Below are positions 30,386 to 38,100 of a stretch of 64,000 nt of DNA, in pieces (the stretch's first letter is position 1; each line of letters opens with the position of its first letter). The position numbers and the translations under genes were made by a program. The notes beneath the pieces are model-generated. The model ran no database searches. It worked only from the letters and a program-made list of their open reading frames with translations, and was not told where the DNA came from. The stretch is from Phallusia mammillata (Eukaryota): positions 12,710,001-12,774,000 of the forward strand of contig OZ281498.1 in NCBI GenBank assembly GCA_965637545.1, given 5' to 3'.

Positions 30386-33300
30386 TCACTTGAATTGGTT
30401 GTACAACACAACAAGTTTTCCATAGCGGGATTTGCAAACAAGGTCATCAAGGTTGTCACCATCAACGTCCATCAGCATCAAGCTGCTTTGCTGATCGATG
30501 CAAAATTCAGGAAAACTCCCTTTCCAGCTTAAATCTTCAGTGAATCCGTCAGCATTAGAAAAGGACACACGAATACTTCTGAAATAGATAAAAACAATGA
30601 ACTCAATTGGCCTAAATGCAGTGATTTGTTTCAGAATATTTTTAGAATAAACTATCCTCTTTTTAGTATGACTTAAAGTGCAAACGAACTAAAATGAGTG
30701 AAGAAAAGGTAAATAACCCACATCTGACCTTTATAAACTTTTTCCCGTTTTTAGTTCTTTTATTAGGGTGGTATTGTAACATATTGTTTGCCTATTTTTA
30801 CCTGCAATAGTACCAACTTTATAGAGCTCTTCTGCCAATTGTGTAGTTAATATTATGCCTGGCAGCAACATGCCTTTACATGCAGTGTAAAACCTTATCA
30901 CACAATATTTAACATTTTTACTGCCAAAACTTTACTTACCCTCTGCTTGGGCATTGACACAGTAAATCGTCAAGTCCATCTCCATTCAAGTCACCAGTTA
31001 CCAGAATTCCAGGCCCATTAAATGCTTTGCAAGTGGTCACAGGCTGCTGCCAGTCAACCGATGAAAATCTGCCGCTAGATGACGCCAGATACACAACCCT
31101 GAAAAACAGCTCGTTAATCTGGTTGTGGTTGAAAAAAAAACATTCAGTTAAATCAAAGCATTATTTTAAAATACTAACGTCCAGTGATCAGCATAATAGC
31201 ACAACAGATCTTCTCTGCCGTCGCCATTAAAATCTCCAGAATAAATACTTCCGTATCTGCAAATGTGTTCAGTTGAATTCCATTGCTCTTGGCCGAAGAT
31301 CAAGGTTTCTGGTAACAAAATAGGAGATTAAAAGACACTGTGAAATCTGAAAATTATTCAATATTAAAACTCACGTGACACGGAAGTGCAGTCATTCGTG
31401 TTGCAGGTTGATGATTGCCAAGCCTGGCCACTACATCCATTGTCTTTTGAAAATCCACCGGTACACTGTCTTTTTCTAAAACATTAGGTTCAATTAAAAC
31501 TCAAATTCTGCAGTGTCAAAAGTATAAATTGTGCAGGTATAATTTTATGCACTGAGACGTTTTTGCTAAATACCTCCATCTCACTCCACTTCCGCATGAT
31601 TTTGAGCAGTCTCCCCATGTTTGCCAGGATTCCCAAGTTCCTGTATTGGGATTCGTTGTCGTTGCGATTAGACATCTTTTCATTGCACAACTTTCTGTTT
31701 CCACCACCGAACCATTGCACTTCTTACTGATGCGTCCGTCACCCAAGCGACAAGTGCGTGTCCTAGTGTAAACTCCATTGCCACATGTTACCGAACAAGT
31801 GCCCCAAGGACTCCATTCGCTCCAGGTAGCTAAAAATAACAAATACGCGTTTTAAAGGACATGTTTATGAAGTAATAGTGACATTACAAAAACATGTTCT
31901 TAAAATTGGCAAGGCTTAGCGAAATTTTTATGTTGTAAAATTACATGTATCTCCCAAACATATCATTAACAAACAGAGGTGGCTGAAAAATTGGGAGATA
32001 TGTAATGTACACATAAATTACCTTGTAAAACTGATACAGGATTCACTGTAGCTGGACACTCGTACATTTTATTGATCTGACTGCTGTCATGTTCGGTGAA
32101 GCCATCGCGCTGAGATTGGACTGGTTTGTTGGTCGATCTTATCAAAATGGTTGGTTGAAGGTTTTTGGAAAACGCATAACCTCCATAATGCATCAGAGAG
32201 CCGATATCGTAGGGAGAACCAAAGGAGTTGACTGAGTTTCGAACGTTGAAATTATTTTCCTTTCCTATTGTGATTCAAGAGTTTGAAAACAAAGCATAAT
32301 AATATTGCATTGTAGATCAGTGCCATTTGTTGCTACCCTTAGCAATCCAGATATGGTACAATATATATATATTGACTACATTAGCGCGTATTGGGTCATG
32401 ATAATGTTCTTTATTTAGTAGCATATACTGTTCGGTCTTATCTACCTGCCATAACATTATCGATTTGTATGATAACATGTTCATCTCTATCCGGCCGAGA
32501 TTGTTCATGCCAGAATCCTAAAGCATGCATAAGCTCATGTTGTACAACTCCCTTCCATTCACAACCATTGCCTATGGATACATCTTGTCGGCCACCTCGA
32601 CGTCCAATGTACGACCTATAATACAAACTAGTATTTCCATTGGTGTCATGTAGAAAACCGGTAATTATTAGTGCTTTGTTTTGAACATTTGAATATATAT
32701 GTATCGTTATTTGCTTACTCACCAGCATCCTCCTCTAGAAACAAAATGAATATAATCTTCTTCATCGCTTCTTTCTACAAAATCTACGCAAGTACTATCG
32801 CCGTACGCTGATATCGCTTCTGAAATAGCTTCTTTAGCTTTGCTTGCTGTTGCAAAATAACGTATGGCGTCATGATAAACTGACGATTGTTTGGCGGAAA
32901 AAGAATCATACTTACACATTCCATCGCTAATTACATACGGGACCTTGACACGACCTTGCAAACGATTTTCATTCCAACGCAACAAACCCAATGAAGCCGC
33001 GTCTTGTGCACCGCTTGGCACTTTGAGATAATTCTGCATTTAAAAAACTTTACTTAATGTTTTGGTTTTGAAAAACATTCGTTATAGTCGAAAAACCAAT
33101 AGGAGGCGCATATATGCAGAAAATCCCAAGTTTGAGTACACTTTTTCAAATCAGTAGTTTTCTTAAAACTCAAAAAAGAAACTGTACGGTCGAAAAGGTA
33201 CATAAATATTAATTAGTTTGATACAAATACTTAAACCTAATAAATTCTTAAATTTACTCTTATTAGAAAGTCGTGATTAGATTTGACCTGTGATGTAACA

Positions 33301-33872
33301 CATAAGATAACTTTATTTTGTTTTATTTACCGTTTCAAATACAGGAACATCTTTAGCATCATATTTAATGTCCTCTTCGAAAAATCCACTTGATTTGCAA
33401 CTGCAACTTGTCTGACATCCGGCTTCGTCCATTTCAAAACCCATCACTTCACAATCGTTGGTGCATTGTGTCACATCAAAAGTGCAATCAACACTGCTTT
33501 GATGGTGAACCATACCTGTAAAGTATAACAGCAAATTTCCAAATCAGAAAAAAAATCTTTATCACAATTACTAAATTTATGCTAAAACTTGCCTGTGCTG
33601 ATTTGGAATTTTTTTAGTAAGAAATTTGAAATTTACGAGCTTACCCATGCAGAAGTTAATATCTATTGGACTTGGAGTATCAGCTCCGCTGGATTTCCTT
33701 AATTGCAAAGTTCTATAAACTTCATCACATACATCATAGCGCGTTGGGTTACCTGCAGAAAACAAAAATTATATAATTCAAACTTTACACAAACCCTAAG
33801 AGTAATAAAATATTCACCTAATACCGAACCAACTGCCAACACAGCAAAGATGCAATAGATGTAGGAGGACAT
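30386..33872 (-). CDS. Secreted astacin (M12A) metalloprotease A, about 613 aa: signal peptide, antistasin-like Cys module, astacin domain, 2x TSP1, 3x FG-GAP/VCBS-like repeats
   Basis: 12 exons (minus strand): 33872-33818, 33752-33645, 33515-33331, 33033-32916, 32846-32723, 32615-32446, 32264-32022, 31829-31574, 31475-31375, 31308-31179, 31098-30940, 30578-30386. Total 1842 nt, in frame. Zinc motif HELMHALGFWHEQSRPDRD, Met-turn SLMHY, TSP1 WSEWSPWGTCSVTCG, repeats GDFNGDGREDLLC / GDLNGDGLDDLLC / DVDGDNLDDLVC. An upstream in-frame ATG at 33902 is an alternative start. Confidence 0.93.
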
Positions 33873-34058
33873 TTCGTCTTTAGTGTTGTGAATTATCACC
33901 ATCTGTTAAAAACTTATGCTTGTTTGACAAATGAAATCGCATTTTTATGTAATTGCACGGAAGCACGTGATTCAATTACTTTGAATCACTTTCCTATTGT
34001 TGTGGTTGGATGAGGATTATCAAGTGACTGGATAACTAGATGACGTAATACCATAGAT

Positions 34059-34258
34059 CAGTGGTCGGCAACCGCTGGGCCGCGGCCCGGTACCGACGAG
34101 TTCGTTACCGCGCCGTATACTTTTTGAGGTTAAATGCTTCAAAACATTTTGCCCATGTATCCTGGGGATAATAAATTAATTTAGGCGTTTTCAAATATTT
34201 GTAGTTTTTGAAGGCCGGTCCGAGATAAAATTTCAGTTTTGAAAACGGTCCGCAGTAG
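34059..34258 (-). mobile_element. Truncated hAT-type MITE (same family as 63340-63574) between the two astacin genes
   Basis: Begins CAGTGGTCGGCAACC and aligns colinearly with the reverse complement of the 63340-63574 element. It stops at GGTCCGCAGTAG, lacking about 21 bp including the second TIR. Confidence 0.85.
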
Positions 34259-35150
34259 AAAACAGAATGACGATAGTAAAAACAAAAAAGATATTTTTGT
34301 TGTGGAAGTAAAAAAATTAAAATTGTTTGTAAAATACAATTATACTATGGAAGATCTTCTAAATAGGGACCTAATGTTGTGTCAATTTTGTCAGTTTGCA
34401 AATTACTACAAATATTGCTTACCATCACTGTTAAACAACTGCGCGGTGCCGATTTATTTTAAACCAGCTAACCACAATTTTTCTGTTGGTAGGACACTGT
34501 CAAATTTGGGTCGTGAGAAACGTTGCAAACAGCTGATTACTAGGTCAATAGTATTCGGAAGTTCGTTACTGCAATGACTTTTGTTCCATGCTCATATATC
34601 CCAAATTAAGAAAAATTGTGTTCGTGTTTTTTTTAAAGAAGAACTGTTTTGCTTTATTTGTTGTTTTCCACACAAAAAAACAACAAAAATATGATAACAA
34701 TTAGTAATTTCTCAAAACACCCAAAAATACTAATTAGAATAAATTTTTATTCATAGAAATGTGTTGGGGTTCCTTTGACAGAGATAAACAAAATATAAAA
34801 TATAAAACAATAAATTTGATTTATTTCATATATTTTACGGTATAAATCTTTTTTAAATCAAATTACCCATGCGGTTGTTGCGGTGGGCGAATGCATTAGT
34901 TTTAAATATGGTGTTATTGCAGAATCAGTGTTGTGGGAACGGAAACGGAAATCAAACCTTTGTTCCGATGACACATGTCGGTAAGTGCGAAAAAATGATT
35001 TCATTCGCTAAATGTTTTATCAGATGTTAATCCTGTGCTCATCTGGTTCGGGTTTCCTCAGTGTTGAAATGGAATTATGACAAATTGTGTTATGCTTATG
35101 CTTAGAAAGTCTCTTAATTTCAAATTAGGTATTTTTCTGTAAATCACAAC

Positions 35151-38100
35151 ATGACAACCTGCTACATTATTGCGTTTTTTCTTATTGTATTCAGCTCATC
35201 AAGAGGTAAGACTTGTTGCGTCGTACGATGTCAATAATTTTTTTAATGAAAGCTTTTTTTAGGCGAAGATTTGGGTTTTGATTTGTGTGAAGAAGTTTAC
35301 CGCATGATACGTACTGGGGAAGTCCCGGATGACGGTGAAACTCCAAATCCAATAGACATCACATATTGTTTAAGTCAGTTTAAATAAATACTTTGCAAAC
35401 TGATTTAAAACGGTTCATCGTTGTTCAATGTCACCCATTGATCAATTTAAACTAAAATATTCAGCAACTAAACTAAACGAATAAGTTACTACATTTTTAC
35501 TTGTGTTTTTTAAAAACTGAAAAAGATTACCCAATACCAAAACACTCCACATGACAAACTGGTCTTCGTTTCAAAACAAAACAGCAACAATACATTTGAG
35601 TAGATTGTTTTCAGCTAAACTTTGACGTTTACAATTTGTGGACGGACAGCTGGAGAGAGAGCAATTTTGAAAAAAAATGGGCTGAGGAAACCGACTTAAA
35701 AAAAATATTTGACTATATTTTTTGTAGGGAAACTGGAAAATGTACAAAAAGGTGAGTGCACTTTCAACACATCGACATGTACACGTGACTGCCACGTGCT
35801 GGGTTACGTCACTGATGAGCTGGGATGCGAGAAAAGTTGCGAATGTCAATCTAGCGGATTTTTAGAGGAAGACATAAAATTTGACCCGGCCGATTTGCCA
35901 GTTATTTTAAAGGTAAACTTTATTAATTAAGTTTGTATATAGCACTTGATAAAGCAAATACTTATTATTGTTCATAACACTGACAAGGGCTAGTCAATAT
36001 TTCATAAAAACGGCCAGAGAGATAGAAACATCGACGTTGAACGCAGCTGCTGAATGTGTTACGAAATACGAAGATCAGGACAAAACTGTTTCTATGTACA
36101 AATTACGTTTTGCTTTTATTGGCGTAATAACAAAGCATACATTTTTTTAACTTAAACTTGACCACAGAACTATGGAAAAGTTGGAAAATCTGCTCAAGAA
36201 GGTGCATCTGTGGGTCTGAAACGATGGGACGAAAAGCGAGTGCAGGGTCGAGTAAAAGTTGCGTATGTGATAAGCAGCGAAATGAGTACGTTTACTGTGT
36301 CTGCTCAAGTGCTGTTATCGTGAATTTTAACTTGGACTTGTTTAGACGACAAAGCCCAAAAATCGATAGCAGATGCGATCAGTGGTTATGCCACTGACAC
36401 TTGCATTGATTTTGTGGAACGCACTACAGAGAGGAACTACATTAAAATTGTGTCGAAGGGCGGATGCTGGTAAACCATGTATTTTTAATCGATAAAGAGA
36501 AGCAATAATAAAAATATTGCAAGACACCTTATTTCTGTTTCTATCATGTTGAATCTGGACACAACGCACTTTGGGCACCACAATACGTCGCTGTTGGGCA
36601 ATTACAACGAAATCTTATAGACCAGTGGTCGTCAACCTATGGGTCGCGACCCCAAGTGGGGTCGCCTAAACTTTTTCTGGGGTCGCAATAAGTCGCCGAA
36701 TTTAATTTATTGCATTTTAAAATTGATTACAGAAAATGAAACTAATATTATGTTCGTTTAGATCGCAAATTTTGCTCTTGTTTTGTAGCACAACTTGCTA
36801 CCTCCTGTTGCAATTAAATCGTGGTAGTGGAAAAACGGAAAATACCTTTACGCGTAACAATGGGTTTCGACAACGTGTATTATGACTCAACACTATAAGT
36901 TTGTGTTATTTAAGGTGACATCAGAACCAGTGAATTGTTATTTATACCCTACTATGCCAAATTTTTTCAATCCCGTTTTCAACCACGTGGCTGTGCGAAG
37001 CAGGATTTAGTGCAGTGAGTGTATTAAAAACGAAACATCGTAATCGATTGGAAGTGGAGCATGACATGCGGTTAAGCTTGTGCAAAGTCAAGCCGTGGCT
37101 TCAAAAACTTGTGGACAGTATACAGGCGCAACCATCTCACTAACAGTGCAAATTAAATGTTGAACAATTTGACAAGTTTGTGTTCCGAAAATTGGGTTTA
37201 TGTCTTAAAATTTAAGACTTAAATGAAACGCCTTAAAAACTTTTTTCGTAATACTTTGATATAGCCATTTTTTCGTAATAGGCCTACTTTTGTATCGCCA
37301 TATTTGTTTGTAATTATGTACAGTTTGTGTAATTGTTCTTTCGGTTCAGCATTACTTAAAACATTTTTCTCAGTGTTGAAAAAAATGGGGTCGCATGTAA
37401 ATTCTGATTACATTTTCCCTTAAATTGGGGTCGCCTATAAAAAAGGTTGAAGACCACTGTTATAGACTATAAACTATAAAGAGTATAGACGAAGTATAAG
37501 CAAAAACAAAGCACAATTTAACAACTTTATTGTTACTAAAAGCGTTCTGAAATGATTTGTAGGTCGTATGTTGGAAGACATGGTGGACCACAAGAGGTGT
37601 CAATCGGCAATGGTTGTGAATGGAAGGGAGTTGTGCAACATGAATTCATGCATGCTTTGGGATTCTGGCATGAGCAATCACGACCGGATAGAGACGAACA
37701 TATTTTAGTCAAATTTGAAAATGTGGCACAAGGTAGTTTGTCCATTACAAAATTTTACAAATTAGGTCCAACACGATATTAAAAATTGACAAATATACAC
37801 ACATAAAATTACTGAGTTAAATTCACACAGCCTTAAATAATTGGTTGCTTTTAGAATGTGAGTTTTGGCTAAATCTTAATGATGTCCTGACAAATATTTA
37901 AGCGCAGCTACCATTTTCAGGAAAAGAACACAATTTCGAAAAACGTGTTGCAATCAATTCATTGGGATCACCTTACGACATTGGTTCAGTTATGCACTAT
38001 GGCGGATATTCATTCACAAAAAATCGCCAACCTACAATCGTTGTTAAAGCGACAAACCAACCAGTGCGATCTCAGAGAAACGGTTTATCGGAACATGACA

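What the first reader, a model, noticed from the sequence alone, without database searches (positions are those of the whole stretch)
33397..33486. Antistasin-like protease-inhibitor module inside the astacin propeptide
Seen in both genes (33397-33486 and 35757-35846): C-x6-C-x3-C-x3-G-[FY]-x2-D-E-x-G-C-x3-C-x-C, followed within a few residues by F[FL]EEDI. Established: antistasin repeats follow C...C-x3-C-x2-G-F-x2-D-x2-G-C-x2-C-x-C and inhibit serine proteases. The astacin Asp-switch latency motif is F-x-G-D-I, here E-E-D-I. No furin-type R-x-x-R site precedes the catalytic domain, only single Lys residues. The P1-equivalent residue is Thr in both. Inference: a zymogen carrying its own inhibitor of the activating protease, or releasing an inhibitor upon activation.
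Basis: partly seen in the sequence, partly recalled or inferred. Interest (0 to 1): 0.7.

Follow-up and report, generated by a model that had tools for sequence, protein, structure and literature searches.

The report
Cysteine knot inside sea-squirt astacin propeptides
Two neighbouring sea-squirt zinc-protease (astacin) genes carry, in the piece that keeps the enzyme switched off, a small disulfide-knotted module related to leech protease inhibitors. It is fused at a fixed distance to the zinc-blocking aspartate, is shared by about half of this animal's astacins and by other sea squirts, and probably serves as a rigid latency plug rather than a working serine-protease inhibitor.

Summary
Window 33397-33486 (- strand) and 35757-35846 (+ strand) each encode a six-cysteine module. 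Four residues later comes F-[FL]-E-E-D-I, the astacin aspartate switch.

RNA contigs from two studies show the gene 1 exon spliced between the signal-peptide exons and the catalytic exons.

The module is a true antistasin-family (Pfam PF02822, MEROPS I15) relative:
- Pfam scores are 22.8 bits for gene 1 (cut-off 21.2) and 15.9 bits for gene 2.
- hhalign against free antistasin repeats of the same genome gives 96.3% probability.
- The only solved-structure sequence hits are guamerin, hirustasin, bdellastasin and antistasin.

It is a family trait. About 23 of about 49 astacin genes in this genome have it. So do 81 distinct homologues, and every named one is ascidian (Ciona, Styela, Clavelina), including the sperm protease Tast2b.

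The inhibitor idea is not supported:
- Only the six-cysteine C-terminal subdomain is present.
- The P1-equivalent residue is mostly Thr, Ser or Asp, and basic in only 5 of 81.
- The spacing from the last cysteine to the zinc-binding Asp is exactly 8 residues in 77 of 81.

I read it as a structural latency element. The papers I could search do not describe it. This scan noted the same arrangement on another piece of this genome (s1-388505).

The parts
33818..33872 (-). Gene 1 exon 1, coding part (ATG at 33872): short hydrophobic N-terminus, a signal peptide or signal anchor. The transcript 5' end reaches about 33919.
   Evidence: RNA contigs and GT..AG joints; in-frame translation
33645..33752 (-). 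Gene 1 exon 2: first part of the pro-domain, with two further Cys and a conserved P-x-P-I-D-I-N-x-C stretch
   Evidence: helix predicted at the equivalent place in the Ciona orthologue
33331..33515 (-). Gene 1 exon 3 (185 nt): antistasin-like module plus aspartate switch
   Evidence: Spliced into 1.94-1.98 kb RNA contigs in 4 runs from 2 studies; Pfam Antistasin 22.8 bits, cut-off 21.2
33397..33486 (-). Gene 1 six-Cys antistasin-like module; the loop after Cys2 reads T-N-D
33367..33384 (-). Gene 1 aspartate-switch motif FFEEDI (Asp codon 33370-33372), 8 residues after Cys6
   Evidence: Asp invariant in A1, A3 and A4; FXGDI motif of astacin pro-domains (PMC9848320)
32916..33033 (-). Gene 1 exon 4: linker, predicted activation site (about Q-D | A-A-S-L) and buried mature N-terminus up to the V-P-Y strand
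   Evidence: Mature astacin structures align from residue 126/127 of the Ciona orthologue model, and the region just before it has low pLDDT
32022..32846 (-). Gene 1 exons 5-7 (32723-32846, 32446-32615, 32022-32264): astacin catalytic domain with HELMHALGFWHE and the S-L-M-H-Y Met-turn
   Evidence: Pfam Astacin on each exon; joints
31519..31829 (-). Gene 1 next exon: two thrombospondin type 1 repeats. FG-GAP-like repeats follow at about 30939-31318.
   Evidence: Pfam TSP_1 2.5e-17; FG-GAP near threshold; joint 31829/32022
35151..35373 (+). Gene 2 exons 1 and 2 (35151-35205, 35263-35373): signal peptide and first pro-domain segment
   Evidence: GT/AG sites and the same phases as gene 1; no RNA in the four runs laid
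35728..35912 (+). Gene 2 exon 3 (185 nt): module (35757-35846; the loop after Cys2 reads T-R-D) plus switch FLEEDI (35859-35876)
   Evidence: Pfam Antistasin 15.9 bits, below cut-off; 68.3 bits against the paralogue profile, of which it is a member
36168..36469 (+). Gene 2 exons 4 and 5 (36168-36285, 36346-36469): activation region and start of the catalytic domain
   Evidence: Pfam Astacin match in the genome scan
37563..37732 (+). Gene 2 exon 6 (end set by analogy with gene 1): HEFMHALGFWHE zinc site
   Evidence: Pfam Astacin 2.6e-26; acceptor read

Best explanation
Both genes encode secreted astacin (M12A) zymogens of an ascidian with the architecture signal peptide, pro-domain, catalytic domain, two TSP1 repeats and FG-GAP-like repeats. 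The core of the pro-domain is one six-cysteine antistasin-family unit. It is homologous to the C-terminal subdomain of leech inhibitors such as hirustasin and presumably forms three disulfides. It is fused through an invariant 8-residue tether (consensus x-x-G-x-[FIL]-[EQ]-[GE]) to the aspartate that replaces the catalytic water on the zinc.

I propose that the knot has been recruited as a rigid, protease-resistant anchor. It would sit beside the active-site cleft (on the primed side, by analogy with pro-astacin) and hold the switch strand in place, giving a structured latency plug where other astacins have a floppy peptide. Activation would then need cleavage in the exposed linker downstream (low-confidence loop; single Lys sites, then trimming to the Ala N-terminus). 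That cleavage removes knot and switch together.

Shown: identity, position, splicing, conservation, spacing, and a zymogen-like fold for an orthologue model. Inferred: the docking site, the disulfide pairing, the activation route, and loss of serine-protease inhibition.
For: Homology to the antistasin family:
- Pfam PF02822 scores 22.8 bits, above the 21.2 cut-off.
- A profile of 12 paralogue modules hits only guamerin, hirustasin, bdellastasin and antistasin in the PDB.
- Its best non-astacin hits among 1.84 billion proteins are pure multi-Antistasin proteins.
- hhalign of module-only profiles against free antistasin repeats of the same genome gives 96.3% probability, E 1.8e-9.
- The only chain of 48,161 with Z>=2 to the module model is antistasin 1skz.

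Position in the pro-segment:
- RNA joints place the exon between the signal-peptide exons and the catalytic exons.
- Mature astacins align to the orthologue model only from residue 126/127, after the module.

Coupling to the switch:
- The Cys6-to-Asp distance is 8 residues in 77 of 81 distinct homologues.
- The six Cys, the Gly and the Asp are invariant.

Zymogen-like geometry:
- The AF2 model of the Ciona orthologue has pLDDT 77-92 over knot and switch.
- It aligns best with solved zymogens: pro-meprin beta Z 28.1, LAST-MAM Z 25.9, and pro-astacin Z 24.6 with 223 residues aligned against about 190 for mature enzymes.

Family trait:
- All 20 module-plus-switch exons in the genome lie upstream of astacin exons on the same strand.
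- All 35 long homologues carry Pfam Astacin.
Against: No coordinates or PAE could be read, so contact between the knot and the catalytic domain is not shown. The structural match of the isolated module is weak (Z 2.0; Foldseek not significant). Variable reactive-site loops are also typical of real inhibitors, and free multi-antistasin repeats also often carry S/A/T at this position, so the P1 argument is suggestive only. No biochemical data exist for any member. Gene 2 has no RNA support in the runs laid.
Confidence: 0.6

Rival explanations
1. One reading: the module is a working antistasin-type serine-protease inhibitor. It either blocks the protease that would activate the zymogen or is released as a free inhibitor when the pro-segment is cut off.
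For: Real homology to MEROPS I15 inhibitors, with the C-x3-C reactive-loop frame kept. The pro-segment is removed as a unit. The loop after Cys2 varies between paralogues, as reactive loops of inhibitors do. Ascidian fertilisation uses both Tast astacins and serine proteases (PMC11673157).
Against: P1-equivalent is Thr in both window genes. Across 81 modules it is T/S in 36, D/E in 13, P in 4 and K/R in 5, which is wrong for the trypsin-like cut at Lys that the linker would allow. The N-terminal four-Cys subdomain of all characterised I15 inhibitors is missing (one search aligns only hirustasin 20-52). The strict 8-residue tether to the zinc ligand is unexplained by this role.
Confidence: 0.15
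2. The knot works on the astacin itself, in trans. After cleavage, the disulfide-stabilised pro-domain (knot plus switch) stays bound, or rebinds, as a tight and long-lived inhibitor of the mature enzyme or of paralogous astacins. Activity would then depend on degradation or displacement of the pro-domain.
For: The same data as for the main reading: fixed tether and conserved switch. A disulfide knot would make the free pro-domain protease-resistant. There are many paralogues with similar switches.
Against: Nothing here separates cis from trans action. The solved astacin pro-segments are described as essentially unstructured peptides lying in the cleft (PMC9848320), and nothing read or tested here shows that a free pro-segment stays bound or inhibits after cleavage.
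Confidence: 0.15
3. The resemblance is convergent: a generic small six-Cys knot (EGF-, TIL- or granulin-like) with no common descent from antistasin.
For: Single-sequence scores are modest: E 1.4e-4 and 0.02. The fold searches are weak.
Against: Only Antistasin is hit in Pfam. Only I15 inhibitors are hit in the PDB. hhalign gives 96.3%. Reciprocal hits to multi-Antistasin proteins reach E 1.7e-31 to 1e-10. The G-[FY]-x-x-D-x-x-G-C core is shared.
Confidence: 0.05

Closest known systems
Antistasin-type inhibitors (MEROPS I15; Pfam PF02822): hirustasin, guamerin, bdellastasin, antistasin
   Same: Six-Cys frame C-x3-C-x10/11-C-x3-C-x-C with the G-[FYL]-x-x-D-x-x-G-C core. Profile-level homology, and the only sequence hits in the PDB.
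   Different: Only the C-terminal subdomain is present: 6 Cys, not 10. P1-equivalent is Thr rather than Arg, Lys or Met. It is embedded in a metalloprotease pro-segment rather than free-standing or tandem. No inhibitory activity is known.
Astacin zymogens with an aspartate switch (crayfish pro-astacin 3LQ0, pro-meprin beta 4GWM, Limulus LAST-MAM 8A28)
   Same: Signal peptide, pro-segment with F-x-[GE]-D-I, and catalytic domain with HExxHxxGxxHE and a Met-turn. The orthologue model aligns best with these zymogens.
   Different: The solved pro-segments are described as essentially unstructured peptides that share only FXGDI (PMC9848320). Here a disulfide knot is fixed 8 residues before the Asp. 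The window genes and their Ciona orthologue have Glu in place of the motif's Gly.
Tast proteins (tunicate astacin plus thrombospondin type 1 repeat sperm proteases; PMC6353882, PMC11673157)
   Same: Ascidian astacin followed by TSP1 repeats. Ciona Tast2b (AZM68748.1) falls among the module-bearing homologues. An AF2 model of HrTast2c in the 2024 paper also shows the pro-domain occupying the active site.
   Different: The term searches I ran in those papers (propeptide, pro-domain, N-terminal, cysteine) found no cysteine-rich or antistasin-like pro-domain module, and neither paper is among the 11 that hold both 'antistasin' and 'astacin'. Pfam does not flag it in the Ciona proteins at E<0.05. 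The window genes' closest Ciona relative is a non-Tast astacin with FG-GAP repeats (P0037). Tasts are reported as type II membrane proteins.
Pro-peptides homologous to free inhibitors (cathepsin pro-peptide I29 and CTLA-2-like inhibitors; subtilisin pro-peptide I9). This comparison rests on my own knowledge.
   Same: A folded pro-domain that shares ancestry with free-standing protease inhibitors.
   Different: In those cases the inhibitor and the pro-peptide target the same protease class. Here a serine-protease inhibitor fold sits in a metalloprotease zymogen.

Membership tests
Antistasin family (Pfam PF02822 / MEROPS I15) | Match to the family HMM at or above the curated cut-off | tested here: met
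   Gene 1 scores 22.8 bits against a cut-off of 21.2. Gene 2 scores 15.9 bits, below it. Eleven of the 12 paralogue pro-domain modules in alignment A1 pass the cut-off (the twelfth is gene 2). Profile-profile comparison with free repeats gives 96.3% probability.
Antistasin family (Pfam PF02822 / MEROPS I15) | Six-Cys spacing with the conserved Gly-aromatic and Asp-x-x-Gly-Cys core | tested here: met
   Alignments A1 and A5; residue-by-residue alignment to guamerin and hirustasin
Antistasin family (Pfam PF02822 / MEROPS I15) | Fold like the solved inhibitors | tested here: inconclusive
   The module model has pLDDT 74.6. VIA wide search: the single hit with Z>=2 is antistasin 1skz (Z 2.0, rmsd 3.0 A, 43 aligned). 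Foldseek is not significant, with hirustasin at rank 2.
Antistasin family (Pfam PF02822 / MEROPS I15) | Full ten-Cys, two-subdomain inhibitor domain as in the characterised inhibitors | tested here: not met
   Only hirustasin residues 20-52 (the C-terminal subdomain) are matched. The upstream exon has two Cys but no match.
Antistasin family (Pfam PF02822 / MEROPS I15) | P1 residue suited to a target serine protease, and measurable inhibition | not testable with these tools
   P1-equivalent is Thr in both genes, and basic in 5 of 81 homologues. Activity needs a bench assay.
Astacin (M12A) zymogen | HExxHxxGxxHE zinc site, Met-turn, and a Pfam Astacin match | tested here: met
Astacin (M12A) zymogen | Pro-segment aspartate switch (FXGDI) | tested here: met
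   F-E-E-D-I in both genes, with Glu for Gly. The Asp is invariant in all homologues, and the family consensus is F-[EQ]-G-D-[IV]. The motif is as given in PMC9848320.
Astacin (M12A) zymogen | Pro-segment lies in the active-site cleft with the Asp on the zinc | tested here: inconclusive
   The orthologue AF2 model aligns best with solved zymogens, with about 30 more residues aligned than for mature enzymes. No coordinates could be inspected.
Tast (tunicate astacin with TSP1 repeats) | Astacin domain followed by two or three TSP1 repeats, in a tunicate | tested here: met
   Two TSP1 repeats in the exon after the catalytic domain in both genes. All named homologues are ascidian.
Tast (tunicate astacin with TSP1 repeats) | N-terminal single transmembrane anchor (type II) and a sperm-surface location | not tested
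   Gene 1 has only an 18-residue hydrophobic N-terminus. No topology predictor or tissue data were available here.

The most novel reading that the evidence does not exclude
A serine-protease inhibitor fold (antistasin unit) was captured by an ancestral tunicate astacin and turned into a cross-class, structured latency domain. This knot-plus-aspartate cassette now gates about half of the ascidian astacin repertoire, including the Tast sperm proteases thought to open the egg coat. Because the freed, disulfide-stable pro-domain could persist, it may act as a second-stage regulator, of the astacin itself or of a non-trypsin serine protease, during fertilisation or hatching.
Probability: 0.3. Interest if true: 0.65.

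Novelty: new variant of a known kind. Interest (0 to 1): 0.5.

Why it matters
The current review of the family states that astacin pro-domains share only FXGDI and that the solved ones are essentially unstructured peptides (PMC9848320). A conserved, disulfide-knotted module of a known inhibitor family, held at a fixed distance from the zinc-blocking Asp, is a different way to build latency.

It is lineage-wide in ascidians and includes the Tast sperm proteases, whose activation mechanism is stated to be unknown (PMC11673157).

It gives a concrete, testable handle (knot deletion, Cys mutants, isolated pro-domain) on how these enzymes are kept silent and switched on.

It is also a clean example of a domain moving from one protease class's inhibitor to another class's zymogen.

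Tried and rejected
- Foldseek of the isolated module against the PDB gave nothing significant.
- The ESM Atlas look-up with the orthologue's pro-domain gave no usable hit.
- The word-indexed protein search with the pro-domain region of a Clavelina homologue returned only the query itself, so it says nothing about other phyla.
- Literature searches (antistasin with astacin; antistasin-like with ascidian; astacin pro-peptide terms) found no description of this fusion. The sea-star adhesion paper that mentions both words concerns separate proteins.
- I considered chance resemblance to other six-Cys knots and rejected it.
- I considered that the module might belong to the mature enzyme. I rejected this because mature astacin structures align only from after the module.
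Every search was run exon by exon by reference, and the full-length fold used a database orthologue from Ciona (P0037) instead.

Full report
**What is there.**
The window is eukaryotic. It holds two head-to-head astacin genes whose start codons lie about 1.3 kb apart: 33872 on the - strand and 35151 on the + strand.

- Gene 1, 33397-33486 (-): C-x6-C-x3-C-x11-C-x3-C-x-C, with G-F and D-E-x-G-C inside.
- Gene 2, 35757-35846 (+): the same frame, with G-Y.
- Four residues after the last Cys come FFEEDI (gene 1) and FLEEDI (gene 2).

**The exon is real and sits in the pro-segment.**
I laid RNA-type Logan contigs from four runs of two studies on 31800-37799. Each run holds one 1.94-1.98 kb contig covering gene 1, with seven GT..AG joints.

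The module exon (33331-33515) is joined upstream to 33645-33752 and then to the start exon. It is joined downstream to 32916-33033 and then to the catalytic exons. All gene 1 exons are in frame.

Gene 2 has matching exons of 55, 111, 185, 118 and 124 nt, with the same phases and GT/AG sites. It had no RNA in these four runs. The low-depth contigs inside its long intron carry mismatches and look like repeat copies.

All searches used single-exon references.

**What the module is.**
- Pfam gives Antistasin (PF02822) as the only family for both exon peptides: 22.8 bits for gene 1 (cut-off 21.2) and 15.9 bits for gene 2.
- A profile of 12 paralogue modules (A1) searched against all PDB sequences finds only guamerin, hirustasin, bdellastasin and antistasin. 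It aligns to hirustasin residues 20-52, the C-terminal subdomain.
- In a full HMMER pass over 1.84 billion representatives, the best hits that are not astacins are multi-repeat proteins. Pfam labels them purely Antistasin.
- Module-only profiles compared with free antistasin repeats from two other loci of this genome give hhalign probability 96.3%, E 1.8e-9.
- Structure adds only weak, concordant support. The AF2 model of the exon peptide has pLDDT 74.6, with its core at 83-88.
- Foldseek finds nothing significant.
- An all-against-all VIA search of 48,161 chains returns a single chain with Z>=2. That chain is antistasin 1skz (Z 2.0, rmsd 3.0 A, 43 residues).

I conclude the module is a genuine antistasin-family unit. 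It is only the six-Cys subdomain, not the ten-Cys domain of the characterised inhibitors.

**It is a family trait, not a curiosity of this locus.**
A Pfam Antistasin scan of the whole assembly gave 26 hits. The A1 profile gave 20 module-plus-switch exons.

Every one of the 20 lies 0.7 to about 6 kb upstream of astacin catalytic exons on the same strand. Three more have the switch split off by an intron. That makes about 23 of about 49 astacin genes.

Two other loci (C4 near 21.94 Mb, C1 near 25.59 Mb) are ordinary multi-antistasin genes without an astacin domain.

Outside this genome there are about 75 single-stretch, full-profile hits near protein N-termini. All 35 long ones carry Pfam Astacin, 23 carry TSP1 and 19 carry FG-GAP-like repeats.

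Of the 30 clusters looked up, every one that a source names comes from an ascidian: Styela clava, Ciona intestinalis, robusta or savignyi, or Clavelina lepadiformis. [quoted passage not shown]

The closest relative of the window genes is a 503-aa Ciona intestinalis protein (P0037). It is 55-59% identical in the module exon and 71-74% identical in the zinc-site exon. The source organism is therefore an ascidian.

**How it is built into the zymogen.**
Across 81 distinct module-plus-switch sequences, the distance from Cys6 to the conserved Asp is 8 residues in 77. The six Cys, one Gly in the knot, one Gly in the tether and the Asp are invariant or nearly so.

The review of the family states that astacin pro-domains of 34-486 residues share only FXGDI. 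It adds that the solved ones are essentially unstructured peptides lying backwards in the cleft, with the Asp on the zinc (PMC9848320).

An AF2 model of the Ciona orthologue, made with a 39-sequence alignment, has mean pLDDT 80.8:

| Region of the model | pLDDT |
|---|---|
| Knot | 77-90 |
| Switch | 90-92 |
| Residues 122-127 | below 50 |
| Catalytic domain | mostly above 90 |

In a second-look structural alignment the solved zymogens come first:

| Structure | Z | Residues aligned |
|---|---|---|
| Pro-meprin beta (4GWM) | 28.1 | 224 |
| Limulus LAST-MAM zymogen (8A28) | 25.9 | 217 |
| Crayfish pro-astacin (3LQ0) | 24.6 | 223 |
| Mature astacin enzymes | about 22-25 | about 190, starting only at model residue 126/127 |

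This places the mature N-terminus just after the low-confidence loop. In gene 1 that is about Q-D | A-A-S-L-G-L-L-R-W. It puts knot and switch wholly inside the removed pro-segment.

**What it most likely does.**
The residue aligned with hirustasin P1 Arg30 is Thr in both genes. Across the 81 homologues it is distributed as follows:

| P1-equivalent | Count |
|---|---|
| T | 23 |
| S | 13 |
| D | 8 |
| A | 7 |
| E | 5 |
| P | 4 |
| L | 4 |
| I | 3 |
| M | 3 |
| K | 3 |
| Q | 2 |
| R | 2 |
| N | 2 |
| G | 1 |
| V | 1 |

Basic residues are 6% and acidic residues plus Pro are 21%. Free multi-antistasin repeats have 19% basic residues at this position.

The linker offers only single Lys sites, so an activator would be trypsin-like. 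A Thr, Ser or Asp loop would not block such an enzyme.

Together with the missing N-terminal subdomain and the rigid tether, I favour recruitment of the knot as a structural latency element. This is an inference. I could not inspect coordinates, and no member of the family has been assayed.

I keep two rivals alive:
- A released serine-protease inhibitor of non-trypsin specificity.
- A long-lived trans-inhibitor of the astacin itself.

**Known or new.**
The Tast papers list only astacin plus TSP1 domains. In the 2024 paper, an AF2 model shows the pro-domain covering the active site. My term searches of those papers found no mention of cysteines or antistasin.

Pfam does not flag the module in the five Ciona proteins I scanned at E<0.05. 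That probably explains why it was missed.

Full-text searches found no paper describing an antistasin-like module in an astacin pro-domain. Automatic Pfam annotation would flag it in some Styela or Clavelina entries: 15 of 35 homologues at E<0.01.

Another report of this scan (s1-388505) noted the same arrangement at a different locus of this genome. I read it after reaching the same view, and my tests agree with it.

I class the finding as a new variant of a known kind.

Noticed in passing
window 30939-31318 (-) and the matching region downstream of gene 2 (about 39400-40100): After the two TSP1 repeats both genes continue into FG-GAP/VCBS-like repeats (G-D-[FL]-N-G-D-G). Pfam scores are just under the cut-off on single exons. 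The Ciona orthologue model's C-terminal part aligns with beta-propeller lectins and integrin alpha (Z 10-12).
   Followed up: partly
window 33645-33752 (-) and 35263-35373 (+): The exon before the module carries two more Cys (D-x-C at a predicted helix and I-N-x-C or I-T-x-C just before the knot). Most homologues have 2-3 Cys in the 60 residues before the module. A fourth disulfide in the pro-domain is possible.
   Followed up: partly
window 34040-34110, and 34000-34400 generally: A GC-rich, SINE-like fragment lies in the 1.3 kb divergent intergenic region. Low-depth RNA contigs touch it with loose ends, as expected of a dispersed repeat.
   Followed up: no
window 36620-37460: Gene 2's long intron 5 is covered by short, low-depth RNA contigs with several mismatches, a 14-nt deletion and non-canonical joints. 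These look like copies of a repeat expressed elsewhere, not gene 2 transcripts.
   Followed up: no
G000 C4:21935088-21940021 (L013) and C1:25588387-25589449 (L014): Tandem free-standing antistasin repeats with no astacin nearby. The C4 array has at least eight near-identical units with an unusual C-T-A-E-M-x-G-C loop (five residues between Cys2 and Cys3 instead of three).
   Followed up: partly
G000 C7:4951317-4951454 and C7:4954655-4954792 (L010): Two nearly identical module-plus-switch exons lie 3.3 kb apart. The upstream copy reads G-D-S-S instead of G-D-I-S at the switch, and no catalytic exons were matched next to it. It may be a recent partial duplicate or a pseudogene.
   Followed up: no
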